A DNA stretch of 64,000 nucleotides, from the IMG/VR virus record IMGVR_UViG_3300028666_000022, positions 62,001 to 126,000 of that record. One strand, 5' to 3'. The notes beneath the pieces are model-generated. The model was not told where the DNA came from, did no database searches, and saw only the letters and a list, made by a program, of their open reading frames with translations. Positions 19 through 60,468 of the stretch are shown in pieces (position 1 is the stretch's first letter; the number at the start of each line of letters is the position of its first letter). A program made the translations under genes and the position numbers.

Positions 19-2794
19 ATGTTTGATACAATTGCTGTTTTAGTTAGATATTTTAAAGAAAATAAACCAAAGGGCAAAAGAACATGGAAAATTGTAGCAT
101 TTTGGGATACATATAATACTAGAGAATCTAAAATTGAAGAACCTGAGTTATCAGAATCAATTAGAAACGAAGCTTTAAATGAATTGTTTAAACTTTGTCA
201 AGTAAAGACATGGGCAGAATGGAAATCTAAATAAAGATATTATATGATTAATGATTATATTAGTTTAAATTATTGTTATAAAATTGATGGTGAAATTTAT
301 AGAAAATTAGATTTTGAACTAGAATTTTCGTTAAATGTTTATTTAACAAATTCGTTAATTAATCAATTGCGCATTGAATTTGATAATGATTTAACTTCTG
401 CTTTAATTAATGTAATGGAATAATTATGAAAACATTAATCAATTTTTTTAAAAATATTTTTTGTGACATTGTTATTTTCATTCCTGCTCCAAAACAAATT
501 TATTTTAAAATAAATACATTAAAAGATGTTCAACGGTATTTAAATAGTATTATATTCATCAACTCTGGTGGTTGTGGTATTGCTGCATTAGCAATGTTTA
601 AGTGGCTTAAGAAAAACAATTTGATTGAAGAAAATACAACTAATTTTGTATTTCTATATAAATCTGACGATGGAACAGACTATTTAAACAATTCCTCTGT
701 TTTAAAACAAAAATCAGGAATACCAGTAGCTCCAGCACATGTTATTTTATTTCATAAAGGTAATTATATTGATTCTGAAGGCATTGTTGAAGTTAACGAA
801 TATCATTGGTTGCAAAATGTTAATGAAGAAAACTTTGTTGTAAGAGCTAATAATAATTTATTCACATGGTGCGGTTTCTTTGATAGAAACAATATTAAAG
901 ATATTGAGAAAATGTTAGAAATTGATATGGACGATATTTTGATATTAAACTAAGAATGTAACAAAATAAAATTATTTTCGTATAATATTTAAACGATAAA
1001 AATAATCAATATGAAAATAGTATTAAATAAATGTATGAATATCAACGAAATGGTTAATACTGTTAGTTCTTTTTCTAATATTGATACTGCTTTAGATATT
1101 ATTAATAAATTTAAACTGAATGAAAAAGTTGTTTTAATTTGGCATAATAATAAACTTATATTAAAATAAATCATGGAAAAATTAACTGAATCTCAAGAAA
1201 ATAATCTTAAATGGTTAGAAGATTTTAGTGGAGCTGAAAAAGAAGTTACTTTTTCAGATGTTTCTAATATTAGTGATGCAATGAATAATATGTTTTTAAA
1301 CGCTTATCTATATTTTTCAAGCGAATTAGATTCTGAAGATAGAATTAATGAACTAATCGAAATATATAAATCAGGTTATAAATTAATTTTAAATGATTAA
1401 ATTATGAAAGCTATATTGAAAATCGGTGATACTATAAAAATATCAAATAAAAACAAAAATCATTCAGATAATGATGTTTGTGCCTATGCAAATATGTGTG
1501 GTGTTGTAACCAATATTTGGGAAGATAATTCCTTTGCTTTATGTTGTGGAAATTCAACATTAATTGTACCAATGCGAAATGCGTTTAAGAAAAAAATAAA
1601 GGGTATTTGGATATATTTAAATGAAGAATTATTATTTCATAAAAGCAAATAAATTATATGCAAGAATATATTACCACACATAAAAAAGAAAATAAAAACA
1701 AATATATTTATTTTACACAAAAAGTAGAATTAGGTATTGAGAATGAAATTGGTTATGAATTAATGTGGAGTGGTAAAGTTAGTAAAGAAGAATGGAATTG
1801 GTCACAAGAAATTGCTAATGAACAACCAAATAGAGTAATAATAAATGAAAATAATGTTATTTGTATAAAAAATTAAACATGACTGATTTACAAAATAAGA
1901 TATTAGAATTAATGAAATCTCAAGATGAATATGAAAAATGGGGATTTTGTTGTATGGGATATAGAGAAATTTCAAATATATTAAAACTAGAAGCTATATC
2001 AGTATCTAATTCAATGCGAACAATGTACAAAAAGGGTATATTAACTAATTATTATTGTAAAGATCAATATGATGATACCCATTATGAATTAAGAAACCCT
2101 AATTTTAAAAAATGATTTATGAAAACAAAAGAAGAAATTTATAAACAAATTGATAAGGCTATGGAAGCCATTAATGAAGGTGGAAAATTTAATGGAATGT
2201 CTTATGAAGATGGCGTAAAATATGCATTAGAATGGGTATGTGGTGATTCGGATGAAGAACCAATGCCAGAAGAAAATTAATGATAAAATAATTTTATTTT
2301 CGTATATTATTAAAAACATTATTATGAAAAATACCGAAAAAGCAATTGAATGGTGGAATAGTTTAGGTAATTTATATAAAAGAAAATTAACCACAGAACA
2401 TTTTGTTGGGAGAAGAGTTAATACATTATGTGATTCTGAAATTGAAGTAATTTATAATGACTTTAATAATTTTGATTTACCTGAAGATTGTACATCATTC
2501 AATGATATAATGTATGATTACAATAAAACAATTAAAATGAAAAAATATAATATTAATAATTATATAATAATTTACCCAAATGAAAGTGGTTGGAGGAAAA
2601 TTATTGAATTAACCCAATCACATTATGAATTAACTCAAGAAAAAGCAAATGATTGGGTTAATATTAGAAAAGAAAATGGTGGTTTTAAAGAACAATTATG
2701 GGTGTTAATTTCAATTTATTATGAAATGTTTTTCAATGGAGAAAAATATTTTAATACTGCAATAATTGATTTATGTGGTGAAGTTATTGAATAA
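19..2794 (+). CDS. Cluster of small hypothetical phage proteins (19..234, 426..953, 1173..1400, 1404..1652, 1658..1876, 1861..2115, 2240..2794)
   Basis: Tightly packed, co-oriented short ORFs with AT-rich leaders; no recognisable motifs. Confidence 0.6.
958..982 (+). promoter_or_regulatory. ECF-sigma-type promoter GTAAC-N16-CGTA (one of 9 copies)
   Basis: GTAAC at 958-962, exactly 16 nt, then CGTA at 979-982. Same spacing at 7019, 7413, 8350 (ATAAC) and 34721 on +, and at 23218, 23963, 27676 and 58048 on -. Confidence 0.75.
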
Positions 2795-6676: not shown

Positions 6677-7030
6677 ATGAAATCCCTTACTCAAGAAATT
6701 CTTAATGAATTTGTTCTTGATTTAAAGAAGAATCGATTCAAAGATATTATCAAAGATCTTAAAATAGATTTGTCTTCTAATGAAGACAATACAGAATACA
6801 TTTATCTAGGTTTAATCATTCTTAGGAAAAAAGAAAGACATAAGGGATATGGTTCATTAATCATGAAAGAAATTATATCTTTAGCAAACGAATATAATCT
6901 TCCAATTAAGTTATACTCAACAGCAGCTTATGGTTCAAAGATTGATAAACTAAATGAATTTTATAATAAACATGGTTTTGTTTTAGATAATTTAATGTTG
7001 TGTTATTTTCCAAAAATTGTAACAAAATAA
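6677..7030 (+). CDS. GNAT-family acetyltransferase
   Basis: RHKGYGS motif A; FYNKHGF motif. Confidence 0.75.
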   Translation: MKSLTQEILNEFVLDLKKNRFKDIIKDLKIDLSSNEDNTEYIYLGLIILRKKERHKGYGSLIMKEIISLANEYNLPIKLYSTAAYGSKIDKLNEFYNKHGFVLDNLMLCYFPKIVTK

Positions 7031-7993
7031 ATTAATTTTCGTATAATTTTTAATTTAAAATTAATAAATGAATAATATAAAATATATTGAACCCAATAAA
7101 AGCTTAATGGGGCGAATATTTAGATTTTTTGGTATTGAATTAAACACTAAATTCAATGATGGATATTTTCATACATTTGGTTATTCTGGAAAACAAAAAA
7201 ATAATAAAAGAGATATTATCATAATAGAAAAATTAGATGGAAATGTCATTAGTATACCTAACAATAAAAAATATTATACGTTTCAGAATAATTTTATTTA
7301 TAGTGGACACATTAAAAATATTGAAAAGACTATAGATAATAAACATAACACATTATTTTTAAATGAAAAAATAAGTGTTAATTGGGACGCATAAATTATT
7401 TTTAAAGAATTAGTAACAAATTAGATTAATTTTCGTAATATAAACTATAATCAACAAAACAATAAAATTTATGAAAAAAGAACAACAATGTAAAATATGT
7501 AATAATAAAAAACTAATTGAAGTATTGGTTATGGGAACGGATGTTGATTGGGTGGAATGCCCATATTGTTCGAATAAATCAGAATATATTAAATTTCAAA
7601 ACTCAGTTAATTAATAATCTTATGAAAGAATTAGAAATATCAATTAAGATCCTAAAGGAAGATAAAACAGAATTAGAATGTAAACTTTATTATTTCTTTA
7701 GAAATGGAAGAGTTCCAGATGATAATGAATATTATGAAATGATGGAATTATTAGAAAATTGGTCAATAATAAAATCAAATATTAAGTGTGTCGAAGATAT
7801 TCAAAAAACAATTATTAATAATATTTAGAATATGATAATTTACACTGAAGCAACAATCAACTACATGGCTAACTTGGGTTTAAACAACGAAATTCAAGTT
7901 ATTTTAGCTAATAGTGTGGTAAAAGAAACTGAAAAATTAAAGGTTAAATATGTTGTAATGAATGAAATTCCCGAAACAATTTAGTTTGAAATC

Positions 7994-23187: not shown

Positions 23188-23230
23188 ATTATTAATATTA
23201 TTAAGTTAAATATATTATACGTAATTAATT

Positions 23231-23926
23231 TTATTTTGTTACAACTAGTTTACATTTTATTAAAAATCTTAAAAAATTTAAATAAGCAAATAATCTTCTA
23301 AATCCTTTTAAATTTGATTTTATTTTGTAAGTGAAATACAATTCATAAATTAATTGAAAATAATTAGGTAATCTTGTTTGAATTAAATCCCATGCCATTG
23401 CATCAGCACCTTCTTCACTATTATCATTATTAAGTTTTATTGAGAAATGATGTCCTATTTCATGGAAAAATGTTCCATAATAATATTTAATATTATAAAA
23501 TCTATCTTCAATTGAACATAATAATATTTTGGGATAGTGAAGTTCTTCTTTTATTATATTACTTTCATAATTTGCTAATTTACAAATTTCTTCATATGTT
23601 TTATGGTATTTCTTTTCAAGATCATTTATTTGTTTCAATGTTTTATTTAATGAATTTAAATATTCGACATCTGTAACATAAATATATTTTCCCAATGCTT
23701 TATTATCTTCATTAGAAATATTAATATTTAATTCATCGTATGTTTTAATAAAAACAGAAATATTTTCTTTTTTACAAATATTTATTGCAGTTTTTTCTAA
23801 TACCTCGATTAATGAAGGATATTTTTTAAAATCAAATAACAATATAAATATATTAAATTGTATTATATATAAAAATATTAGAGAAATTAGTAACAAAACA
23901 AATAATGTAATCATTGTTAGTATCAT
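23231..23926 (-). CDS. Membrane-anchored HExxH metallopeptidase-like protein
   Basis: N-terminal hydrophobic helix; FFHEIGH...SEEGAD. Confidence 0.6.
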   Translation of the reverse strand: MILTMITLFVLLLISLIFLYIIQFNIFILLFDFKKYPSLIEVLEKTAINICKKENISVFIKTYDELNINISNEDNKALGKYIYVTDVEYLNSLNKTLKQINDLEKKYHKTYEEICKLANYESNIIKEELHYPKILLCSIEDRFYNIKYYYGTFFHEIGHHFSIKLNNDNSEEGADAMAWDLIQTRLPNYFQLIYELYFTYKIKSNLKGFRRLFAYLNFLRFLIKCKLVVTK

Positions 23927-23983
23927 AATTTTAATGTTAAATTGTTTATACTATCTGTAATATACGTAAATAGATTTATTTTG

Positions 23984-24505
23984 TTACAATTTTTTAATTA
24001 ACTTTTCTTTTAATTTCCATATTCGTAAACATCCTAATGTAGCAACTTTTAATTTTTCTTCAGTAGTTAATTTCCTACACTCTTTAATTCTACTTGCTTC
24101 TTTATCTATTCTAGCAAAACATCTACCATTTTCATATTTACTACATGTTATTATTCCAGCATCTTCTGGAATAAATTCAATACTTTTCTCTAATAGTTCA
24201 ATAGGTATTGCATAGTATAACTTGCTTATTCTATTTTGTTTATCTTTGTGGTTGTGTCGTTTTTTAAAATCTGCCTTAAGATCAGAAATACTTCTTTTAA
24301 TTTCTACTTCAATAGCGAAACCAGATTTCATAATTATAAAAAGATCGGTTTCATGCATTCCTACTAGTCCCCATGAAATATTTGGTACTATTATATGAGT
24401 TCTTATTCCAAACAGTTTAGAAATAGCTACCTCCATTTCAATTAATGAAATGGTTTTAGATTTAATGATATTTGATTTTCTTTTTATTCCCATTTCACTC
24501 ATCAA
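23984..24505 (-). CDS. PD-(D/E)XK nuclease-like protein
   Basis: ETDLF...EVEIKRSISDLKADFKK. Confidence 0.65.
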   Translation of the reverse strand: MMSEMGIKRKSNIIKSKTISLIEMEVAISKLFGIRTHIIVPNISWGLVGMHETDLFIIMKSGFAIEVEIKRSISDLKADFKKRHNHKDKQNRISKLYYAIPIELLEKSIEFIPEDAGIITCSKYENGRCFARIDKEASRIKECRKLTTEEKLKVATLGCLRIWKLKEKLIKKL

Positions 24506-26845: not shown

Positions 26846-28195
26846 ACTGCTAAATTATCATTAGATTCATCACTAGCTTTAATTACCCAAATAAAAAATA
26901 TACAAATTCCAGTTATCCACCATTGGTAATGATTTGTAAATCCACCAATAAATGTTACAATAACTACAACTAATAGTAGTGTAACTAATTTGTTTTTTAA
27001 AAACCATTTCATAATAATATGTTTTATATTAATACTATTCTTTATTTAACCAATGAACTACTGGCTCATGTCCTTCTTCAACACCAAATTCTTTTAAATA
27101 ATTATTATATGTTTGATCCCATTCATCGATGCTATACCACCATCCTTCAGGTAAAAACATTTTAGCTGCAGCATCTGCTTCTTCATGTGTTTGGAATACA
27201 AAGGTTTCTTCGCACATCAATACTGTAATTAAAAGTGGTTTAAAACCTGCTTGGATTATTTCTTTTAGAAGATCACTTTTTGGTGTGCCATAAGTATATT
27301 CTTCTTGTTCATTAATTGGAAAATTATTTTCCATAATACAACTCATCATTAAGTAGTTGAAAATTTCTCTCTGCTGTTTTTAATTTAAACATAAGATTAT
27401 TTATTTCATCTTCAAGCCTAGAATATTCATTTATTATAATTTTCTTAAATTCAGGATCTGTCGATTTAATCACCTTTGTTTCAAAATCACCATCTTCTTT
27501 CATCCATTTTGGTATTTCAAAATGAATTGCATCACCGATGTTTGATGAATAAGTAGCAGCAGAATTAGCCTGTTTATATGAATTATAACCACTATCTTTA
27601 ATTAGATATCTTATGGAATATTTCTGATATTTTTCTTGATTTGTCATAAAACTAATTTATTTAAAATAATAATAATACGAACAATAATTCATTTTGTTAC
27701 AAAATTGAATTTATATTTTCATGTCCATCGGTCTAAATTTAACTCTTCCAAACCAGCACAACATCTCATAGCATTTACTATCTCAAGCCATTCTGATTGT
27801 AAACCTTTACTAACCAATATTTCTTTTACAATTTTAAGATCATTTAATGATTTCTTAAAATTTATCTGATTTTCAACATTAAGCCAATCCACTCCTTTAG
27901 AAAAACAATAAATAGGTGTTTTTTCTGTCAGAGGTTCTCCACAAATTTCATCTTCATATAGAAGTTTTGCTGCATTTAATACTTTTTCTGAAGTCATAAT
28001 TAATTATTTTAAATATTATATAAACAATTTTTTTCTAACAAATTACAAATGTAAGCAAAAATAACCAAATTTACAAGTATTTATAAAAAAATATCTAAAT
28101 ACTTGCAAATTTCAAAAATTATTCAGATCTTTGCAAAAACATATCATATAAACGTATGATATTTCTCATAAAAATAACCTAATAAAAAAAATCTT

Positions 28196-34707: not shown

Positions 34708-34771
34708 ATTTCATTATTTTGTAACAAATTCAAATCTTTTGCGTAATATATCATAACTTAAAAATATTGTC

Positions 34772-51707: not shown

Positions 51708-54700
51708 TTATTCTAAAGTTAATGTTGATAAATCGTTTTCATCTAATTGAACATTTATTGTATAATCAGGATTGATATTTACTCTATGTTCAACAACTAA
51801 TATTTTTTTAACATAATTTTTTATTATGTGAATTAAATCACGGAATTCTTCTACACTGTCTTCATCCAGTTTCCCCATTACTTCATCCAATAAAAACATC
51901 ATGGGTTTTGCTTTTACGTTTATTTGATTCAGTGCAAATTTTAAAACAATACTTGAAAATGTTCTTTCTTTTCCACAAGCACTAATACAATCAATTATTG
52001 CATCGGGTCTTTTATAATGCATTAACTTAGGTCTTAAATCATCTGGATCTAACCAAACTTTAAATTTACTATCAGATAATATTGTTTCAAGTGTTGAATT
52101 TATTTTAGGTATAATATAATTACTTAACATTTGAGTAGGAATACCATCTCTATGAACACAAGTTTTATATAAATTTATTACAGAATCTCTATATTCTTGT
52201 TCTTTAAATGTAGTGATTAATTCATTACTAGTTTTTATTTTATTTTGTTTTTCAGAAATTAATGATTTTTTTGTGAACATATCTTCTTTATATCCTTGCT
52301 CTTCTGTTTCTAATGTAGTTAATTTTAACTTAGCTGCAGCTATACCAGTTTCAATTTTTTTATTTTCTTCGATTTGAAGTAAACTATTGTTATAATTATC
52401 TATTTTTTGTTGTAAAATACTAATTTTCAGTTCTTCATTCTGAATCAGAATTGGTGTTTGATTTAATTCGGTTTGAAATTCTTTACGTTTTTCAACATCA
52501 TTTTTATCATTAGTTAATTCACCAATTTGTTTTAAAATTACTTCCATTTTAAGACCAGCAGTCTTAATATTATCTTCAATTTTTTTTATTTCTTTATTTT
52601 GTATATTAATCTTGTCTTGATGATCTTTTTTATCTCTAGTTTCTTTAATTTTAATCTGATCTGCAATTTCAAACATTAATTTTTCTTTCTCTTTTATTAA
52701 ATCATCAACATGACTTTGATGTTCAGGTAGAAGTGGTTGTTTACAAGTAGGACAAGTTTTACTTTCTTTTAGTTCAATAATTTCTGTTCTATATTTACCA
52801 CCATCTTTTTTTAAATTAAAAATTTCGCCATTAATGATTTCAATTCTATGTTCTTCATCTCTAATGATTTGTTCTGCATTTTTAATTAAAATCTTTTGAT
52901 TATATTCATTGGTTTTATGTTCATCTTTTTTTCCAATTAAATCAAGTAATTTTGTTTCATCATAACTTTCTTTAAGTAATTTAATGTTATCGTTTAAAAC
53001 TGTCTCACGTGCCTTAAATTCATCTATGTTTTTATTATGAGTGCTTATGTTCCCATTAGTATTAACTATGTTCAAATTACTTATTTCAGTATCTATTTTA
53101 AATAATTTCTTTGTTAGATCTTCAACATATTTTTTCCCAATTGTTACTTTATTTTGTACTTCAGGAATTGTTACAGTATCAAATACTTTAATATCATTTT
53201 CGAGAGTAGTTATGTTTTGTGTTAACTCATCAATCTGTTGAGTGGTTTTAACAACATCAACAGTAATTCTATTCTTTTCATTAACCTTTTTTTGATATAC
53301 TTTTAATGTTTCTAATTTTTTATCAAAAATATCTAAACCACTATCTCTCAATAATTCGTCAAGAAAGTTGGACATTTGATTGGTTGAAAGTATCTTATTG
53401 AGACTGTCTGATGTTGTCATAACTATCCTCATGAAATTATCATAATCGCCAATAATTCTTTCAATTTTCTTTTGTGTTTTTACTTTTCTGTCTTCATCTA
53501 ATTTTTCTAATGAAGTATTTTCATTCATTTCTTCATCAGGATTAGAAAGTAGATAATAATTTACAGTGGTTGGTGCTCCATTAATAGTACCATCTTTTGC
53601 TTTATTTATTTCTGTTCTTCTCTTAATACCATAATATTCTCCATTAGCATCTAAAACTAAATAAGAGTCACATGAGGTTGCACCATTTCTATTATTCACA
53701 TAACGTAAATCACCATATTTAATTCTGCTTTCAGTTTCTGGAGTTTTATTAAAAAGAGAATATAATATATTTTTATATATTGTTGTTTTACCATTTTCGT
53801 TTTTTCCAACTATCTGATATATACCATCCTGATCTCTCCAATTAATATCAAATTTACCATAAGACATGAAATTGTTACAGCCAAATTTAATAATATTCCA
53901 TTCTATATTTGAAACATCGTCAATAATAATTTTTGAATTAATTTCATCAATATCTAATTTAATTATGTCTTCAATTAATTGTTTCTCTGTACCGATTTTT
54001 TCTAAATATTCTCTAAATATTTTATGTTGAACTGCAGAATTAGTAATGTTTTCTAATGTAATTTTATCTTTTACTTCAATCTTTTCATTTTCAATGAATT
54101 CATTTTTATTTGAAATTGTAATATTTTCATATTTTTTATTGAAATATTGTGTTAATTTATTCTCATTTTCTTTATTACGTGTTTGTGGTAAAGTACCCCA
54201 AATAAAACGTATTTTCATATACTTGGTTGGATTAGATATTTCATAATCCAAATCATCAAAATCAGTATAGGGTGTTATTTTAATATTTTTAAAAGAATAT
54301 TCATTATAAACTGGAATTTCTTTTACTGTTTTATCGACAACATCCCATAACAAATAACCATGAAATGCATCATCTCCTTCAGAAAAATCTTGTGAAATAA
54401 GAGATCCTGAATAAGCTTTTGTTTTATTTTTATCTAAATATTGTTGCAAATGGATGTCACCCGCTAACAAATAATCAGATTTGAAGTCACTTATTTTATA
54501 ATAAGATTTACTGTTCATTTCAAAACCAGTCGTAGATTTACAACCACCAATAGGATCATGAAACAAATCAATATATATTTTATTACTCGTTTGTTTATCT
54601 ATTTCAATTTGCTTACCAGTTTTAGATTTCCAAGGATTATTATTTTTTTCTCCATGATGCCAAACTGCCCATGTTATATTTTCATCGTCATAAAATCCTG

Positions 54701-55043
54701 TTTTATCATAATAAATTATATTAGGATTATTAATCAATGTAACAATTGCTTTTATTGAATCAATCCTCTTTGAATTGTTTGCTAAATAATCATGATTACC
54801 TCTAGTAATTCTAACCGGAGCAATTAATGCTAATGTATTTAATAATTCTGAAGCCAATATTAATTGTTCTCCTTGTAGATTAACATATTCATGAACCAAA
54901 TCACCAACAATCACAATTCGATCTGGTTTTTGTTCGTTAAGAGATTTAATTAAATTTATGAATACAGATTCATACTCTTCATTACGTGTTGGTGATTTAC
55001 GTAAATGTATGTCTGAAAGATGTGCGATTTTAGTTATAGTCAT
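51708..55043 (-). CDS. Fused Mre11/SbcD nuclease and Rad50/SbcC ATPase
   Basis: DIH, GD, GNHD, GDIH phosphoesterase motifs; Walker A GKNENGKT; CPTC hook; Walker B FLLDE; H-loop VEH. Confidence 0.92.
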   Translation of the reverse strand: MTITKIAHLSDIHLRKSPTRNEEYESVFINLIKSLNEQKPDRIVIVGDLVHEYVNLQGEQLILASELLNTLALIAPVRITRGNHDYLANNSKRIDSIKAIVTLINNPNIIYYDKTGFYDDENITWAVWHHGEKNNNPWKSKTGKQIEIDKQTSNKIYIDLFHDPIGGCKSTTGFEMNSKSYYKISDFKSDYLLAGDIHLQQYLDKNKTKAYSGSLISQDFSEGDDAFHGYLLWDVVDKTVKEIPVYNEYSFKNIKITPYTDFDDLDYEISNPTKYMKIRFIWGTLPQTRNKENENKLTQYFNKKYENITISNKNEFIENEKIEVKDKITLENITNSAVQHKIFREYLEKIGTEKQLIEDIIKLDIDEINSKIIIDDVSNIEWNIIKFGCNNFMSYGKFDINWRDQDGIYQIVGKNENGKTTIYKNILYSLFNKTPETESRIKYGDLRYVNNRNGATSCDSYLVLDANGEYYGIKRRTEINKAKDGTINGAPTTVNYYLLSNPDEEMNENTSLEKLDEDRKVKTQKKIERIIGDYDNFMRIVMTTSDSLNKILSTNQMSNFLDELLRDSGLDIFDKKLETLKVYQKKVNEKNRITVDVVKTTQQIDELTQNITTLENDIKVFDTVTIPEVQNKVTIGKKYVEDLTKKLFKIDTEISNLNIVNTNGNISTHNKNIDEFKARETVLNDNIKLLKESYDETKLLDLIGKKDEHKTNEYNQKILIKNAEQIIRDEEHRIEIINGEIFNLKKDGGKYRTEIIELKESKTCPTCKQPLLPEHQSHVDDLIKEKEKLMFEIADQIKIKETRDKKDHQDKINIQNKEIKKIEDNIKTAGLKMEVILKQIGELTNDKNDVEKRKEFQTELNQTPILIQNEELKISILQQKIDNYNNSLLQIEENKKIETGIAAAKLKLTTLETEEQGYKEDMFTKKSLISEKQNKIKTSNELITTFKEQEYRDSVINLYKTCVHRDGIPTQMLSNYIIPKINSTLETILSDSKFKVWLDPDDLRPKLMHYKRPDAIIDCISACGKERTFSSIVLKFALNQINVKAKPMMFLLDEVMGKLDEDSVEEFRDLIHIIKNYVKKILVVEHRVNINPDYTINVQLDENDLSTLTLE

Positions 55044-55253: not shown

Positions 55254-55670
55254 ATGGTAGTATTTAGTTCAAAAAATCGTTATTCTTCAATCTCCGATTT
55301 ATTCTCAACTGTTTTTGATGAAATTATTGAATCATCAAACAAAATTAACAAACGACCTTCTTATGATATTATTGAAAATGATAATGAATATATCATCGAA
55401 GTATCATTAGCAGGAATGAAGAAAGAAAATATTAATATTGAGGTTGATAAAGATAATTTAATTATTAAAGCAAAGCGTGAAGAAAATAAAGAATTAAATT
55501 ATAATCGAAAAGAAACTTATTTTGGAGATTTTGAAAAAACATTTAAATTACCCGATTCAATAGATAATAAAAATATTATATCTTCTTTTATTGATGGTAT
55601 ACTAAAAATTACTATTCCAAAGATTATTAATCCTAATACTAAAAAGAAAATAGAAATAAATCAGTATTAA
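55254..55670 (+). CDS. Hsp20 small heat-shock protein
   Basis: LAGMKKENI, FEKTFKLP, DGILKITIPK. Confidence 0.92.
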   Translation: MVVFSSKNRYSSISDLFSTVFDEIIESSNKINKRPSYDIIENDNEYIIEVSLAGMKKENINIEVDKDNLIIKAKREENKELNYNRKETYFGDFEKTFKLPDSIDNKNIISSFIDGILKITIPKIINPNTKKKIEINQY

Positions 55671-55721: not shown

Positions 55722-56270
55722 TTATCTAAATACCTCTTCACTAATATTCTTTTTTAGTTTGGTTTTAATATAATTAATTTTATTACTCACAGTACTACTA
55801 GTAATTTGCAATTTATCCCCAATTTCACTATAATTATATCCTTGAACATATTTTAAATCCAATAAAGTAAAATCATATGGGGATAATTGTGTTGAAATAT
55901 AATTAATTGCGTTAATATTATCAAAAGCATTTGAAGTTAATGTTGAACAATTATATAATAAATTTGTAAAATCCGAAGAATAAATTATTGTTTTATTTCT
56001 CCACTTATCAACCATATAATTTTTTGTTATAGTAAGAACCCATGATTTAAATTTCGATTTATTGTTATCAAAATCTTTTATATTTAGAAAAACCTTAATT
56101 AATATCTCAGATACATCATCCTCAATATCATTATATGTAGAATATTTATATACAATATAATTTTTTACTATTTTTTTATATTTATTATAAATAATTTTTT
56201 GTGCTGCCTGATTTCCAATCAAAATTTTTTGAATCAGAATCATATCCTCTTCTTTCTCTGCTACTATCAT
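55722..56270 (-). CDS. ECF-type sigma-70 family RNA polymerase sigma factor
   Basis: Region 2: EDDVSEILIKVF..FKSWVLTITKN..VD; region 4: GYNYSEIG..TVSNKI. Confidence 0.88.
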   Translation of the reverse strand: MIVAEKEEDMILIQKILIGNQAAQKIIYNKYKKIVKNYIVYKYSTYNDIEDDVSEILIKVFLNIKDFDNNKSKFKSWVLTITKNYMVDKWRNKTIIYSSDFTNLLYNCSTLTSNAFDNINAINYISTQLSPYDFTLLDLKYVQGYNYSEIGDKLQITSSTVSNKINYIKTKLKKNISEEVFR

Positions 56271-57267
56271 AAGGTTTTTGTAATTTCTTCATAAAATAAT
56301 CATCAGTAATTAAAGACCTTGCTGTATATAATGCTTTAATTACTTCTTCTTCACCAAAATTTCTCCTTAATTCATCAACATCATCTTTTGTTGGTAATTT
56401 AACTATCTTAACACTATCTTCACAACCAACATATATCGTTTCTAACATATAAAATAAATCAATTGCATTCGCATATGCATCTGGATCAAGTAAAACAATT
56501 ACTTGTGGTTTTAATTCTTTTAATCTTAAAAATAAAGTTGTTGATAATGTCTTGCCTAATAATGGTATTGCATTTGGAACTGAAAACATATCAGTAACAC
56601 CTTCAACTAAACATACTGGAGAATCCCAATTAATATATCCTTCATTAAATATTATTAAATCTTTATTTGATTTTGGATTATCATATTTATTTTTCAATTT
56701 CCTATCATAAGCCCTCGCTACAAAATAATTAATATCACCATTTCTATCATAAGAGGGAAATATTATCCTCTTAGCATATTTTCCTGTTGTACAAAAACCG
56801 ATCCTATATTTTAATATCTTTTCTCTGTTTATTTTTCTGTCATTTATTAAATAATTATATGCCTCAAAATGTTCTGAATTATTTACATCCATTTGTGAAA
56901 ATAATATCATTTCTTGTGGAAGACTGACTTGTACATATTCTTTTTCTTCATCATAATCGTTAGAAGAATAGTTCCCATAAACACTTAAATATGATTTATA
57001 TAAATCATAATCTATTTTCGTTCCATATAATCGAATTAATTTACCTAAAGAACCAGAAAAATTAGGTTCTGAGCAACGCCAACATCTAAAAACTAACCTA
57101 TTCCTATGTGTTGATATTTCTAAATTAAATTTATTATCGGCATATAATAATCCATCTCGTTCTTGACAACGAGGACAACATGTTTGTAGCTGAGAAGAAA
57201 CACCTAATCCTCTTGTATCTGGAAAGATATTTCCAATAATCTGATGAAATTCAATACCATCTATCAT
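56185..57267 (-). CDS. DnaG-like DNA primase (Zn-binding + TOPRIM); start probably the ATG at 57267
   Basis: CPRC...CWRC; RIIFP..YFVAR; LVEGVTD; LLDPDA; TATATTTG at 57273-57280 just upstream. Confidence 0.85.
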   Translation of the reverse strand: MIDGIEFHQIIGNIFPDTRGLGVSSQLQTCCPRCQERDGLLYADNKFNLEISTHRNRLVFRCWRCSEPNFSGSLGKLIRLYGTKIDYDLYKSYLSVYGNYSSNDYDEEKEYVQVSLPQEMILFSQMDVNNSEHFEAYNYLINDRKINREKILKYRIGFCTTGKYAKRIIFPSYDRNGDINYFVARAYDRKLKNKYDNPKSNKDLIIFNEGYINWDSPVCLVEGVTDMFSVPNAIPLLGKTLSTTLFLRLKELKPQVIVLLDPDAYANAIDLFYMLETIYVGCEDSVKIVKLPTKDDVDELRRNFGEEEVIKALYTARSLITDDYFMKKLQKPYDSSRERRGYDSDSKNFDWKSGSTKNYL

Positions 57268-57284
57268 AGTAGCAAATATAAACA

Positions 57285-57322
57285 AAAAATTGCTATAAAA
57301 CAAGAGAGTTATAGCAATTTTT
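57285..57322 (-). terminator. Intrinsic terminator closing the DGR transcript
   Basis: aaaaattgctataa / ttatagcaattttt (14-bp stem). Confidence 0.7.
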
Positions 57323-57335
57323 AAAAATAAGATAA

Positions 57336-57356
57336 TTAATTACCGATTTTCTTCAT
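57336..57356 (-). pseudogene. Putative stub of a DGR reverse transcriptase (MKKIGN*)
   Basis: Sits where the RT normally starts after TR and spacer; resembles MKRIGNL-type N-termini recalled for Bacteroidota DGR RTs. Confidence 0.5.
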
Positions 57357-57466
57357 TCTTTTTGTTTTTTAAAAAATCATCTTCGTTTTCACTACCAATG
57401 CTCTTCCTTTTATCATAGTCATTTTTTGCCATGCTGGCAAGGTCTACACTATTATTTACAATAAAA

Positions 57467-57538
57467 CATAACTGCGAACTAGTATTCGTATTCAGCGTAT
57501 TATAGTAATAATTCGTATTGTAAAAACTGAAACAAGAA
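57467..57538 (-). repeat. DGR template repeat (TR)
   Basis: 72 bp; differs from the VR at 13 sites, all A in TR; rich in AAT codons in the VR frame. Confidence 0.93.
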
Positions 57539-57579
57539 AATACTAATGTGAGGCAATAGTGTACAATCTATAATCTATT

Positions 57580-58017
57580 TTACATTAAATATTCTTCATA
57601 TAATTTTGTAAATGTCTTTCCACAATATTCTGCCTTTTCCTGACTTTCAAGGCAAAACCGCGAACCAGTATTCGCACCCAGCGCATCATAGTAATAACCC
57701 GCATTGAAAAAACCGAAACAAGAATCAGCATTAAAATAAGGATACCATTTCTTTTGATTATTATTAGTGTAATCAGGTTTCCAATCTTGATTTATTACAT
57801 AGATTATATGTTCCAATTTTAATTGAGCAACAATATGTTTTTTATTAATGTTAAGATAATCATTTGGAACTGGTAATACTCTACAAGCATCATCATATGA
57901 CTTAATGTCTCTCCAGTTATAAAAATTAACTAGCTTAAATACAATATTAGTTCTAGTTGATTTTTCATTATCAACTACATAACCCTCTGGAGCACAAATT
58001 CTAATTTCTTTTTCCAT
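57580..58017 (-). CDS. DGR target protein (small, C-terminal CLec-like variable region)
   Basis: Contains the VR ending in GSRFC; ECF-type promoter copy at 58048-58072 upstream. Confidence 0.85.
   Translation of the reverse strand: MEKEIRICAPEGYVVDNEKSTRTNIVFKLVNFYNWRDIKSYDDACRVLPVPNDYLNINKKHIVAQLKLEHIIYVINQDWKPDYTNNNQKKWYPYFNADSCFGFFNAGYYYDALGANTGSRFCLESQEKAEYCGKTFTKLYEEYLM
57653..57724 (-). repeat. DGR variable repeat (VR)
   Basis: Encodes SCFGFFNAGYYYDALGANTGSRFC; TR in the same frame reads SCFSFYNTNYYYNTLNTNTSSQLC. Confidence 0.93.
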
Positions 58018-59181
58018 CTTATTTTAAATTTAATTATTTACTTAATATACGTAAACATATCTTATTTGTTACAAATTATTTTAATATAATCCCAACGATT
58101 TAAACCAATTATTAATCCAATCAATTCTGTATCCCCATTTACCCGAAATAATATATTTAATTGGCATTCCAATAAGTAAGATTAACATAAAAATCAATGC
58201 AAATGGTAATGTAAATCTAATTATTAATGGTGTTTCAATCTTTTCTTTTTTATAAAATTCTAAATCAGAACCACGTAAACGATCGACAATATCATCGGCA
58301 TTACATTTCTTTAATTCAGGTATTCTATTTTGTAATTCAAATGCAACTGAATTATAATCTATTCTTCTTTGTTTAAAATAAAATGACATAATATTATTTA
58401 TTTAATAATTCTATTGAACAATCATTATACCCTAATTTATATGCATAATCTAATGAAATTTTAAATGTTTCAATAAATTCATTTGAAAAATCTTCACCAA
58501 TACTCAAACGATATTTACCTATATCAAAAACATATTTCCCATCAGCTATAGTAAGTTTAATTGGTGTTTCAACAATTATTACACCTTGTAAAATTTCATT
58601 TTCTTTCATAATATTAAATTTAAATAATTATCATTAAAACTTCTTTTCTCCTTCTAAGAAAGGAAAAAACATAATCAACCTATTCATAAATGCAGGTGGA
58701 ACTATTACAAAATTTCTTCCTAGTTTTAGGTGTTGCTGTTGTAATTCGTTGAAAATCCTAACAACAGTTTGTTTTAATGCACTATCATCAACTACATTAG
58801 AATCCATAACATCTGAACTATTTGAACCATTTTTTAACCTTTGATTTTCAGCAAAAATTTTAGCATAATTTTCTTTTGCTTCACCTAATTCAGTCCTCAA
58901 TAATTCCATTTCTGAAGATAATGCTTCTACCTGTTCTTGTAACCAAGAATTATCATTTAATTGAGTACTTGAAGCCACTTCAGATTTTTCCTGTTCCTTA
59001 ACCTTTTCATTTGGATTCAATGGTATGTCCTCCAATAATTTTGCTACTGTTTCTTTAGCTTTTAAATCACGTTCTTCTTCAGGAGTAGTTTTTTTCACTA
59101 CCTTCTTTACTTCTACTTTTTTAACTACTGGAACAACGGCTTTTTTAGCACCTTTGGCTAAACTCATTAATTTGTTTTCTT

Positions 59182-60468
59182 TCATAATATAATTATTTTT
59201 AATTCTTTTAATTTATTTTCTAAATACTCTTCAATATTTTTTACTTTATATGATATTCTAATTAATCTTATATTTTTCTTTTTACAATAATCATTTTTTA
59301 TTTTATCATTAGCTTGTCTTAATTTTAACCCTTTTTCTCCACCAAAAAAATTTATAGCCATAAAATGTTGTCTACCATCAAATTCAATTAATACGTTATA
59401 ATTATTAAGATAAAAATCAAATGATAATTTTTGTTTATTTTTACAATCGTCAAATTTTTTTTGTTGTTCAAAATTAAAATTATTTTTAGCTAAAAAATTT
59501 TTTATTGTTAACTCACCCCTAGAACTACTACAAATTGAACATCCATTACCACTTAAATGACTGTGTGGTGTTTGTAAAAATTCTCCATGAATAGGACAAA
59601 TAATTTTTAATTTTTTATTTGATGATATATATTCTGTTTTAGAATAATCATATTTATTATTATGTATAATATTTGCTTTTTCAATAAAAAAATTAATGTT
59701 TGTTTTTGATCCAGAACATAATGAACATCCATTAGTTCTTAAATGAGAATTTGGTATTTGTTCAAATATTCCATGAATCGGACATTTAATTTTTACTTTA
59801 ATATTTGCACTAATATAATTAGTTTCCGAATAATCATATTTATTATTATGAACAATATTTGCTTTGTTTATGAAAATTTCAGTGGTTTTTTTAATTTTAT
59901 CACTACATTTTGAACATCCATATCCAGTTAAATGACCAGATGGTAATTGTTCAAATATTCCATGAATTGGGCATTTAATTTTTACTTTGATGTTTGCACC
60001 AATATAATTTATCTCTGAATAATCAAATTTATTGTTATGAATAATATTTGCTTTTTTAATAAATTCACTAGTATTAGATTTTTCTGTACCACCACATTTT
60101 GGACATCCATCTCCTATTAAATGATCATTTGGTCTTTGAATAAACTCTCCGTGTGTTGGGCAAATAATTTTTACTTTAGTTTTATTTTGTTTATATTCAA
60201 CTAATGAATAATCATACTTATTTTTATGAATAATTTTTGCTTTTTCAATAAATTCATTAGAATTAGATTTTATATTACCCGCACATTTTGGACATCCTCT
60301 ACCATCTAAATGATCGTTTGGTGTTTGTTCAAAAACATCATGTTTTAAACAAATAATTTTAACTTTAGTAGAACTATTAACATAATTAACAAAAGTATAT
60401 TCATATTTATTTTTATGAATATACTTTGCTTTTTTTATAAACTCTTTTGTTGTTAATTTTTTACCCAT
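59182..60468 (-). CDS. Homing-endonuclease-like protein with five Zn-ribbon repeats and a C-terminal PD-(D/E)XK/Vsr-like domain
   Basis: 5x FI.KA..IH.NKYDYS...IC..HG.F.Q.P..HL.G.GC..C; FDFYL..IEFDGRQH..DKIK. Confidence 0.85.
   Translation of the reverse strand: MGKKLTTKEFIKKAKYIHKNKYEYTFVNYVNSSTKVKIICLKHDVFEQTPNDHLDGRGCPKCAGNIKSNSNEFIEKAKIIHKNKYDYSLVEYKQNKTKVKIICPTHGEFIQRPNDHLIGDGCPKCGGTEKSNTSEFIKKANIIHNNKFDYSEINYIGANIKVKIKCPIHGIFEQLPSGHLTGYGCSKCSDKIKKTTEIFINKANIVHNNKYDYSETNYISANIKVKIKCPIHGIFEQIPNSHLRTNGCSLCSGSKTNINFFIEKANIIHNNKYDYSKTEYISSNKKLKIICPIHGEFLQTPHSHLSGNGCSICSSSRGELTIKNFLAKNNFNFEQQKKFDDCKNKQKLSFDFYLNNYNVLIEFDGRQHFMAINFFGGEKGLKLRQANDKIKNDYCKKKNIRLIRISYKVKNIEEYLENKLKELKIIIL

What the first reader, a model, noticed from the sequence alone, without database searches (positions are those of the whole stretch)
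57580..58017. DGR target is a 145-aa protein in a replication region, with strong A-to-G skew
SEEN: 11 of 13 changes are A>G and 2 are A>T, with no A>C, giving mostly Gly/Ala/Asp. The gene lies beside primase and sigma, has no signal peptide or fibre domain, and sits under the ECF-type promoter. KNOWN: classic phage DGR targets are tail receptor-binding proteins. INFERENCE: an intracellular diversified binder, e.g. for anti-defence or host takeover.
Basis: partly seen in the sequence, partly recalled or inferred. Interest (0 to 1): 0.6.

Follow-up and report, generated by a model that had tools for sequence, protein, structure and literature searches.

The report
Retroelement target left without its enzyme
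The repeat pair is a real diversity-generating retroelement (DGR) signature, but this 340-kb phage carries only a broken-off piece of the cassette with no reverse transcriptase, so the protein's variable patch is probably frozen; its family is a widespread, unnamed DGR target found among early and replication genes rather than tail genes.

Summary
TR (57467-57538) and VR (57653-57724), both on the minus strand, differ at 13 positions. All 13 are TR adenines (11 A>G, 2 A>T; P = 7e-9). The 145-aa gene has no signal peptide, lies beside primase and sigma, and sits under an ECF-like promoter.

The DGR is incomplete. The complete 339,898-bp genome encodes no reverse transcriptase (RT). The sequence after the TR matches the conserved TR-to-RT spacer of a widespread cassette: one to three small targets, TR, spacer, 316-aa RT, 101-aa accessory gene. 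It stops six codons into the RT (MKKIGN, then a stop).

That stop lies at the edge of a 1.3-kb island. The island is absent from 45 related phages and, apparently, from a co-occurring variant. The VR is identical in contigs from three other samples. Best reading: a captured, RT-less fragment with a frozen VR.

The A>G skew is mainly a family trait (59% A>G over 110 TR/VR pairs; the window's excess has P = 0.049).

At family level, 64 of 80 viral loci have the RT. The cassettes examined lie among lysogeny-switch, replication or accessory genes, never in a tail module. A confident model (pLDDT 88.9) matches no solved fold, C-type lectin included. The intracellular-binder idea is therefore plausible but untested.

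The parts
57580..58017 (-). Target gene, 145 aa. It belongs to a widespread small phage protein family (phrog_11581, no Pfam match). The ORF is intact and has no signal peptide.
   Evidence: Exhaustive HMMER search: 1,725 cluster representatives at E<=1e-3. AF2 model pLDDT 88.9.
57653..57724 (-). Variable repeat (VR), covering residues 98-122. Eleven residues differ from the TR-encoded sequence.
57467..57538 (-). Template repeat (TR), non-coding. It has 22 adenines, 21 of them in codon positions 1-2 of the VR frame. It is homologous to the TRs of the complete cassettes.
57357..57466 (-). TR-to-RT spacer of the DGR RNA. It includes the hairpin TTGCCAGCATGGCAA (about 57426-57442) and a second helix enclosing a GAAA-loop stem. 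It keeps every invariant column of the family alignment.
   Evidence: Alignments A5 and A6. Consensus structure with compensatory changes in 7 of 9 pairs. Hairpin 1 folds in the single sequence.
57336..57356 (-). Stub of the reverse-transcriptase gene: ATG AAG AAA ATC GGT AAT TAA (MKKIGN, stop). It aligns with the RT start MKRIGN of L008 and L094.
58048..58072 (-). ECF-like promoter motif GTAAC-N16-CGTA, just upstream of the target's ATG.
   Evidence: 8 sites in the window against 0.15 expected; 0 of 100 shuffles reach 8.
57331..58633 (-). Lineage-specific island of about 1.3 kb between the conserved 183-aa gene and primase. It holds a 71-aa ORF (58394-58609), a 102-aa membrane-like ORF (58081-58389), the target, VR, TR, spacer and RT stub. 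The edges are uncertain by a few bases because TTATTT occurs at both ends.
   Evidence: The 183-aa gene and primase are adjacent in the related loci checked, all 45 of which carry both. None has the target, the RT or the 71-aa or 102-aa ORFs. A loose end at 57330 in run X5 matches the end of the 183-aa gene.
57284..57322 (-). Terminator-like hairpin (AAAAATTGCTATAA...TTATAGCAATTTTT) belonging to the phage backbone. It follows the island and precedes the likely true primase start, ATG 57267 (MIDGIEFH).
   Evidence: Read directly. Peptide pattern and matched residues of the relatives.

Best explanation
The locus is a fragment of a DGR cassette, not a working DGR.

Shown:
- A widespread cassette exists in phages: one to three tandem small target genes, an ~80-nt TR, a structured spacer, a conserved 316-aa RT and a 101-aa accessory gene.
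- This jumbo phage carries only the first part: one target with its VR, the TR, the full spacer and the first six codons of the RT.
- That part sits at the right-hand edge of a 1.3-kb island between a conserved 183-aa gene and primase.

Inferred:
- The piece was captured already truncated from a phage in which the DGR was active. The TR and VR agree at all 50 non-A positions, although the TR has diverged from other family TRs.
- The capture was recent. An island-less variant appears to co-occur, and the TR and spacer show no decay.
- With no RT and no accessory gene in the genome, the phage cannot make TR cDNA itself, so the VR is frozen in one variant.
- The gene is intact and has its own ECF-like promoter of the type used elsewhere in this phage. 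It is therefore probably expressed under the phage sigma factor as a fixed-specificity ligand binder.
- Given the family's genomic contexts and the lack of export signals, the protein most likely acts inside the infected cell. Its ligand is unknown.
For: DGR signature:
- 13 of 13 mismatches fall on TR adenines, P = 7e-9; adenines sit in codon positions 1-2.

No RT in a genome with direct terminal repeats and a CheckV completeness of 100%:
- The Pfam RVT_1 six-frame search found no candidate.
- No G...SQ motif in any frame.
- A cognate RT from the same cassette family found nothing by the genome search.
- phmmer --max against all six-frame segments gave no E-value better than 0.5.
- The 101-aa accessory protein is also absent.

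Homology to the complete cassette:
- 64 of 80 IMG/VR loci found with the family have an RT about 100 nt after a TR.
- Most of the RT-bearing loci show two A-specific TR/VR pairs; some show one or three.
- The window's post-TR sequence aligns through the spacer to the RT start codon, then stops at MKKIGN-TAA.
- The spacer structure shows covariation, and the window keeps it.

Island:
- 45 related phage loci share the 183-aa gene, primase and sigma in the same order but lack the target, the RT and the 71-aa and 102-aa ORFs.
- Five related records, four at 100% and one at 91% estimated completeness, have neither an RT nor a family member.
- A contig in run X5 matches up to 57330 and then continues with the 3' end of the 183-aa gene.

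Assembly is sound:
- Independent contigs from X3 (57017-58080) and X5 (57013-57330, 57301-57438) cross the RT-stub junction with no differences.

Frozen VR:
- Contigs from X3, X4 and X5 cover the VR with no differences.

Promoter.

Non-tail contexts.
Against: - The TR and spacer are perfectly preserved. This fits recent capture but equally fits continued use with an RT supplied in trans.
- Logan contigs drop rare variants and depth was only 3-6x. Identical VR contigs therefore cannot exclude low-level diversification.
- The island-less variant rests on a 30-nt loose-end consensus from one contig.
- 'Captured already truncated' and 'full cassette inserted, then RT deleted back to the island edge' cannot be told apart with certainty.
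- There is no expression or protein data.
- The intracellular location is inferred from gene context and the lack of a signal peptide only.
Confidence: 0.78

Rival explanations
1. The module is still diversified, using an RT and accessory protein supplied in trans by a co-infecting phage or a prophage that carries a complete cassette of the same family. The jumbo phage would then be borrowing another element's DGR machinery.
For: - The TR, both spacer RNA elements and all family-invariant spacer columns are intact.
- The TR and VR are identical at all 50 non-A positions.
- In run X5, another contig shares 39 nt of the spacer (2 differences) and continues into ATGAAGAGAATTGGAAATCTTT (MKRIGNL). 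An RT-bearing cassette of the family is therefore present in the same community (tables 7 and 8).
- From my own knowledge, not tested here: DGR proteins of Bordetella phage BPP-1 work when supplied in trans.
Against: - The VR is identical in contigs from three other samples.
- Nothing shows that the RT-bearing element infects the same host.
- Integrity is equally explained by recent capture, since an island-less variant appears to co-occur.
Confidence: 0.1
2. The 145-aa protein is a virion component: a small tail-tip or receptor-binding accessory, as in classic phage DGRs. This is compatible with the RT-less state.
For: - The family member in Bacteroides phage Versailles is annotated 'tail protein'.
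- The VR segment of about 25 residues resembles the C-terminus of DGR-targeted tail proteins of crAss-like phage cr55_1 and of Versailles (hhalign E 9e-4 and 2e-3).
- RTs of this cassette are 50-60% identical to crAss-like DGR RTs that sit next to tail proteins.
Against: - The similarity is confined to the TR-templated segment. The rest of the protein matches no tail protein.
- The Versailles gene lies between a NinB-like recombination mediator and the replisome organiser, not in the tail module.
- Other contexts: integrase/repressor/cro/LuxR-type regulator in L066; Mu-like transposition genes in L094; helicase and primase in L129; primase and sigma in the window.
- No structural match to any tail protein in the PDB. 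BFVD and ESM Atlas return only uncharacterised phage proteins.
Confidence: 0.1
3. An RT is present but was missed, because it is very divergent, interrupted, read in another genetic code, or lost by misassembly.
For: The first-pass filter of the genome search returned no candidates, so alone would be weak.
Against: - phmmer --max with a cognate RT against all stop-to-stop segments of 50 aa or more found only noise.
- The motif scan found nothing.
- The RT start codon is present and is followed by a stop after six codons and then by backbone sequence.
- The junction is confirmed by independent contigs.
- ORFs are dense under table 11, so nothing suggests another code.
Confidence: 0.02
4. This is not a DGR at all: a chance duplication of the gene's 3' end that drifted under AT-biased mutation (G>A on this strand).
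For: The genome is 25% G+C. Eleven of 13 differences are G in the coding copy against A in the non-coding copy.
Against: - None of the VR's 11 C positions differs, two changes are T against A, and all 13 hit TR adenines (P = 7e-9).
- The non-coding copy is followed by the conserved DGR spacer and the RT start.
- The same layout with an RT occurs in 64 viral loci.
Confidence: 0.005

Closest known systems
Classic phage DGRs (Bordetella phage BPP-1 Mtd; crAss-like and Bacteroides phage DGRs that diversify tail proteins)
   Same: - Adenine-specific TR-to-VR differences, with AAY-rich TR codons.
- VR near the 3' end of the target, with the TR downstream on the same strand.
- In the complete cassettes of this family, an RT follows the TR. 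That RT carries the LPIGNYLSQ and YADD motifs, hits RVT_1 and is 50-60% identical to crAss-like DGR RTs.
- The VR peptide ends in a G-S/F-R-L-C motif, like the tail-protein targets.
   Different: - The window has no RT and no accessory gene.
- The target is 145 aa with no tail or fibre domain.
- The VR is followed by two more conserved helices rather than ending the protein.
- No C-type lectin fold was detected.
- No Avd-type gene was recognised. A conserved 101-aa gene (phrog_19665, no Pfam match) follows the RT instead.
- Genomic context is early, replication or accessory, not tail.
The uncharacterised small-target DGR cassette found here in IMG/VR phages (e.g. L008, L066, L094, L129)
   Same: - Target family: 35-57% identity, phrog_11581.
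- Homologous TR, spacer sequence and spacer structure, and RT start codon.
- A>G is the commonest substitution.
   Different: - One target rather than the usual two.
- The RT is cut after six codons, and the 101-aa accessory gene is absent.
- The host genome is a 340-kb, 25% G+C phage, whereas most of these loci come from contigs of roughly 30-60 kb.
- The target has an ECF-like promoter of the host phage's type.
Decayed, RT-less copies of the same cassette (L063, L065, L055; also tandem family genes without a TR such as L001, L057, L082)
   Same: Family targets persist without the RT. L063 and L065 still show A-specific TR/VR pairs.
   Different: In L063 and L065 the TR itself is cut short (62 and about 50 nt) and the spacer is gone. 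In the window the TR and the whole spacer are intact, and the break lies inside the RT gene.
Tentaclins and other C-type-lectin DGR targets of gut phages (PMC10743442; PMC8144416)
   Same: They are phage-encoded DGR targets other than the main tail fibre, and sometimes there are two targets per cassette.
   Different: Tentaclins have an N-terminal C-type lectin domain followed by Ig domains (PMC10743442, abstract). This family has neither by Pfam or by fold search.

Membership tests
Diversity-generating retroelement (functional, self-contained) | A DGR-type reverse transcriptase encoded near the TR | tested here: not met
   No RT in the complete 339,898-bp genome. Only six codons of the RT gene remain, at 57356-57336.
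Diversity-generating retroelement (functional, self-contained) | A TR/VR pair whose differences fall at TR adenines | tested here: met
   13 of 13 mismatches at adenines, 0 of 50 at other bases, P = 7e-9.
Diversity-generating retroelement (functional, self-contained) | An accessory protein (Avd or equivalent) | tested here: not met
   The family's conserved 101-aa post-RT gene (58 loci) has no homologue in this genome; best phmmer E-value 0.25. There is no room for a gene between the VR and the TR (114 nt).
Diversity-generating retroelement (functional, self-contained) | Cis RNA elements after the TR (spacer used for cDNA priming) | tested here: met
   The spacer aligns with 43 complete cassettes, keeps all invariant columns and keeps both helices. 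The consensus helix shows compensatory changes in 7 of 9 pairs. A priming function is inferred by analogy, not tested.
Diversity-generating retroelement (functional, self-contained) | Ongoing VR diversification within populations | tested here: inconclusive
   Contigs from three other runs have an identical VR. However, contigs hide rare variants and depth was only 3-6x. No raw reads were available.
C-type lectin-fold DGR variable proteins (Mtd, TvpA, TaqVP type) | A C-type lectin fold carrying the VR | tested here: not met
   AF2 model: pLDDT 88.9, pTM 0.76. Foldseek against the PDB: best E 2.1. VIA-align against 48,161 chains: best Z 3.4, with no C-type lectin chain among the 50 rows shown. 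No Pfam FGE-sulfatase or lectin hit. A very divergent variant cannot be excluded, and the VR loop itself is poorly modelled (pLDDT about 55).
Small-target DGR protein family (phrog_11581) | Sequence membership and a hypervariable stretch between the SGFGF and GSRLC motifs | tested here: met
   phrog_11581, E 1.2e-20. 337 representatives at E<=1e-10. The alignments place the variable stretch at the VR.
Phage tail or receptor-binding proteins | A tail-module location, or similarity to a tail domain outside the VR | tested here: not met
   Contexts. hhalign similarity to tail-protein DGR targets is limited to about 25 VR residues. Presence in virions cannot be tested with these tools.

The most novel reading that the evidence does not exclude
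This family may be a distinct class of DGR: one that diversifies small, non-secreted proteins lacking a C-type lectin fold. They are expressed from early, replication or accessory regions of phages, as tandem paralogues, and would act as intracellular variable binders, for example against host defence or takeover targets. Frozen variants, like the one in this jumbo phage, would be exchanged between phages as ready-made binders. Because the TR and spacer are intact, such a variant might be re-diversified in trans by a co-resident cassette. The papers I could search describe phage DGR targets as tail or adhesion proteins, or as unknowns presumed to be C-type lectin variants (PMC8144416, PMC10743442, PMC6199706). 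I found no description of this family.
Probability: 0.3. Interest if true: 0.8.

Novelty: new variant of a known kind. Interest (0 to 1): 0.55.

Why it matters
DGRs are the only known natural system in prokaryotes and their viruses that rewrites a chosen protein patch at will. In phages they are understood as tools for changing host receptors.

This family is abundant: 1,725 cluster representatives, with an RT next to it in 64 of 80 viral loci. It has a confident model without a recognisable C-type lectin fold, and it lies among early and replication genes. If it really acts inside the cell, DGR biology would extend to phage-host conflicts after entry. It would also offer a second natural scaffold that tolerates massive variation.

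The window itself shows how such cassettes break up. A target with its TR and RNA spacer moved, without the enzyme, into a 340-kb phage and acquired or kept a promoter of that phage's own sigma regulon. RT-based DGR surveys screen for the RT first (for example the method in PMC6199706), so they would miss loci of this kind.

Tried and rejected
- **RT search.** Four independent searches of the genome, all negative: Pfam RVT_1, motif regex, a cognate RT by the genome search and by phmmer --max.
- **Primase as a disguised polymerase for the DGR.** I considered this for the ORF after the TR (56185-57303). It is an ordinary DnaG-type primase, conserved with sigma in 45 relatives that lack any TR. 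Rejected.
- **C-type lectin fold.** No support from Foldseek against the PDB, VIA-align wide, or a profile search of PDB sequences.
- **First search for related loci attempts.** The single protein and the broad alignment A3 found nothing or failed. A narrower alignment, A4, worked.
- **Closer relatives or a donor.** The metagenome contig scan returned only the window's own contig plus 41-45% relatives.
- **A TR in L001.** This 3.2-kb contig holds the two closest paralogues. None was found.
- **The island's 71-aa and 102-aa ORFs.** They have no counterpart next to family cassettes, so their origin is open.
- **AT-biased decay of a duplication.** Rejected (see rival explanations).
- **Complex prediction.** Not used. 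I make no binding claim that a pass would change.
- **Literature.** Searches for orphan or RT-less DGRs, or for intracellular phage DGR targets, found nothing specific.

Full report
**1. What the window is**

The window is bases 62,001-126,000 of a 339,898-bp virus record. The record has direct terminal repeats and a CheckV completeness of 100%. It is 25% G+C and comes from a rhizosphere metagenome.

ORFs are dense under table 11. No other genetic code was used.

**2. The observation**

A 72-nt direct repeat lies at 57467-57538 and 57653-57724. On the minus strand, the upstream copy is the VR. It sits near the 3' end of ORF 57580-58017 and covers residues 98-122. The downstream copy is the TR, which is non-coding.

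- The two copies differ at 13 positions, all of them TR adenines: 11 A>G, 2 A>T, no A>C.
- None of the 50 non-A positions differs.
- The chance of all 13 falling on the 22 adenines is 7e-9.
- Twenty-one of the 22 adenines are in codon positions 1-2 (AAT, ACG and AGT codons).
- Every change is non-synonymous.

This is a textbook DGR signature.
- Primase (phrog_47, 2e-29) and a sigma-70/ECF-type sigma factor follow the TR.
- The protein's N-terminus is hydrophilic, with no signal peptide.
- The motif GTAAC-N16-CGTA occurs 8 times in the window against 0.15 expected. By the ORF list, most of the sites end roughly 25-30 nt before an ORF start. One lies at 58048-58072(-), upstream of the target's ATG.

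**3. No reverse transcriptase**

The ORF after the TR is a primase, not an RT. Every search of the genome for an RT was negative:
- The RVT_1 six-frame search found no candidate.
- A regex for the G...SQ motif seen in the cognate RT (LPIGNYLSQ) found nothing in any frame.
- A cognate RT, obtained later from a complete cassette of the same family (L008), found nothing with the genome search.
- The same RT run with phmmer --max against all 1,432 six-frame segments of 50 aa or more gave no E-value better than 0.5.

**4. The family and its complete cassette**

The target has no Pfam match but hits phrog_11581, a family of unknown function. An exhaustive HMMER search found 1,725 cluster representatives at E<=1e-3. 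Most are about 150 aa; some are tandem fusions of 250-300 aa.

One homologue (P0012, locus L008) is followed by a paralogue, a TR and an RVT_1 gene. A scan of IMG/VR with a family alignment gave 80 loci:
- 64 of the 80 have an RT 57-83% identical to the L008 RT. It starts about 100 nt after a TR of about 80 nt.
- Most of these RT-bearing loci have two VRs in tandem paralogous targets; some have one or three.
- A conserved 101-aa gene (phrog_19665, no Pfam match) follows the RT in 58 of the 84 loci searched.

Over 110 non-redundant TR/VR pairs there are 1,544 changes at adenines and 45 at other bases. The adenine spectrum is A>G 59%, A>T 26%, A>C 15%. The window's 11 of 13 is at the high end but barely significant (P = 0.049; 5 of 110 pairs are as skewed). 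The skew is therefore mainly a trait of this DGR family, or of selection on these VRs.

**5. The window holds a truncated cassette**

The 110 nt after the window's TR align with the TR-to-RT spacer of the complete cassettes (44-sequence alignment A6). The shared elements are:
- the hairpin TTGCC-N-GGCAA followed by an A-run;
- a second helix enclosing a small stem-loop;
- the AAAGCAAAGG box;
- the RT start codon.

RNAalifold finds 9 consensus pairs, 7 of them with compensatory changes. The window keeps every invariant column, and by hand-pairing it keeps both helices.

The RT reading frame begins ATG AAG AAA ATC GGT AAT. That spells MKKIGN, against MKRIGN in L008 and L094. It then meets TAA at 57338-57336.

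What follows is unrelated: a terminator-like hairpin, then the primase. The primase's true start is probably ATG 57267 (MIDGIEFH) rather than the TTG that the ORF listing reports.

**6. The island**

Forty-five related large phages share primase at 52-66% identity, with sigma directly downstream. In the loci checked, a conserved 183-aa gene ends about 60 nt before primase.

None of the 45 loci has the target, an RT, or the window's 71-aa and 102-aa ORFs. Five related records, four at 100% and one at 91% estimated completeness, have no RT and no family member.

In the window, 1.3 kb lies between the 183-aa gene and primase (about 57331-58633). It holds the 71-aa ORF, the 102-aa ORF, the target, the VR, the TR, the spacer and the RT stub.

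In run X5, a contig matches the primase side up to 57330 and then continues with other sequence (table 7). The reverse complement of that sequence matches the last codons and stop of the 183-aa gene, at 20 of 21 bases by eye. So an island-less variant appears to co-occur.

The island's right edge lies within a few bases of the RT stub. The simplest reading is that the cassette arrived already truncated. I cannot exclude a full insertion followed by a deletion back to that edge.

The junction is not an assembly artefact. Contigs from X3 (57017-58080) and X5 (57013-57330, 57301-57438) cross it with no differences.

**7. Is it still active?**

Contigs from X3, X4 and X5 cover the VR with no differences. 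That agrees with a frozen VR. It is weak evidence, though, because contigs hide rare variants and depth was 3-6x.

The TR and spacer show no decay. Together with the co-occurring island-less variant, this points to recent capture.

The same integrity leaves room for trans-activation. Another X5 contig shares 39 nt of the spacer (2 differences) and runs into ATGAAGAGAATTGGAAATCTTT, which spells MKRIGNL. An RT-bearing cassette of the family is therefore present in the same community. I rate trans-activation at about 0.1.

**8. What the protein is**

AF2 with 131 homologues gives a confident model (pLDDT 88.9, pTM 0.76). Its elements are:
- a short N-terminal beta pair;
- three helices (41-76);
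- a beta hairpin (91-108);
- the VR loop, which is poorly modelled (pLDDT about 55);
- two C-terminal helices (126-144).

The fold searches gave:

| Library | Result |
|---|---|
| PDB, Foldseek | best E 2.1 |
| 48,161 PDB chains, VIA-align | best Z 3.4; no C-type lectin chain in the 50 rows shown |
| PDB sequences, profile search | no hit |
| BFVD, ESM Atlas | only uncharacterised phage proteins, some from crAss-like viruses |

Profile comparison with the tail-protein DGR targets of crAss-like phage cr55_1 and Bacteroides phage Versailles matches only the roughly 25 VR residues ending in GSRL/GFRLC. So the templated segment is shared with classic targets, but the scaffold is not recognisably the same.

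Roux et al. proposed that unannotated VR domains are new C-type lectin variants (PMC8144416). I could not confirm that for this family.

**9. Where the family lives**

| Locus | Cassette state | Neighbouring genes |
|---|---|---|
| L066 | complete | integrase, repressor, cro-like and LuxR-type regulators |
| L094 | complete | Mu-like transposition protein and ATPase |
| L129 | complete | DnaB helicase, primase/helicase, DNA methylase |
| L008 | complete | lysis and accessory genes |
| Versailles | member with no TR beside it | NinB-like mediator and replisome organiser; the record's 'tail protein' label probably reflects VR-level similarity |
| L005 | no RT or TR/VR pair found | nucleotide-metabolism genes |
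| L001 | no TR or RT | two paralogues flanking a sigma factor |

None of these lies in a tail module. It does not show what the protein binds.

**10. Decay elsewhere**

- L063 and L065 keep A-specific TR/VR pairs but have a cut TR and no RT.
- L055 keeps the 101-aa gene but no RT or TR.
- Several loci keep tandem targets only.

The targets therefore outlive the retroelement, which suggests they are useful as fixed variants.

**11. Verdict**

The non-tail, likely intracellular reading is plausible. Active diversification in this phage, a special A>G skew and a C-type lectin fold are not supported.
- The window's element is a captured, RT-less DGR fragment (confidence 0.78).
- The more interesting result is the family itself: an abundant DGR cassette, apparently undescribed, that diversifies small proteins with no recognisable C-type lectin fold, outside tail modules.

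Noticed in passing
window 958-982(+), 7019-7043(+), 7413-7437(+), 23218-23242(-), 23963-23987(-), 27676-27700(-), 34721-34745(+), 58048-58072(-): The motif GTAACAAA-N13-CGTA (an ECF-like -35/-10 pair) occurs 8 times against 0.15 expected. By the ORF list, most of the sites end roughly 25-30 nt before an ORF start. This looks like the regulon of the phage's own sigma factor (55722-56270).
   Followed up: partly
L066:6924-7229, L008:10010-10318 and 56 other loci: A conserved 101-aa gene (phrog_19665, no Pfam match) overlaps the end of the RT gene in this DGR family. It is probably the accessory factor standing in for Avd. It is absent from the window's genome.
   Followed up: partly
alignment A6 (window 57334-57481 minus strand plus 43 loci): The TR-to-RT spacer of this DGR family has a conserved RNA structure: a hairpin followed by an A-run, then a helix enclosing a variable stem-loop. 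Seven of 9 predicted pairs show compensatory changes.
   Followed up: partly
L063:2044-2105, L065:5811-5861, L055: Other viral contigs carry RT-less remnants of the same cassette. In L063 and L065 the TR is cut short but still pairs A-specifically with two VRs. L055 keeps the 101-aa gene but has no RT or TR.
   Followed up: partly
window 56900-57050 and 57900-58024 (run X5): Run X5 also holds contigs about 9% diverged from the window over primase and the 5' end of the target gene. There is also a contig that appears to join the 183-aa gene directly to the primase upstream region, which would be an island-less variant.
   Followed up: partly
window 59182-60468(-): A 428-aa HNH/homing-type endonuclease (phrog_559, 7e-116) lies between the exonuclease and the 183-aa gene. 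It is present in only 16 of 45 related loci, so it is itself a mobile insertion close to the DGR island.
   Followed up: partly
window 51708-55043(-) and 55254-55670(+): An 1111-aa ORF combines an N-terminal Mre11/SbcD-type phosphoesterase with a Rad50/SbcC-type ATPase and zinc hook in one protein. Next to it, on the other strand, is an Hsp20 small heat-shock protein.
   Followed up: no
L004 7875-8456 (Bacteroides phage Versailles, WAK79127.1): The family member in this cultured phage is annotated 'tail protein' although it lies in the recombination/replication module. The phage's RT and its tail-protein target are about 44 kb away in the record. The label probably comes from VR-level similarity. 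I did not test whether this gene is a remote VR of that DGR.
   Followed up: no
L073:606-694 and L074:359-439: Some cassettes have a third VR in a family gene 4-5 kb upstream of the tandem pair. It still matches the same TR A-specifically.
   Followed up: no
window 57265-57303(-): The primase ORF as listed starts at TTG 57303, inside a terminator-like hairpin. Relatives and the MIDGIEFH peptide point to ATG 57267 as the true start.
   Followed up: partly
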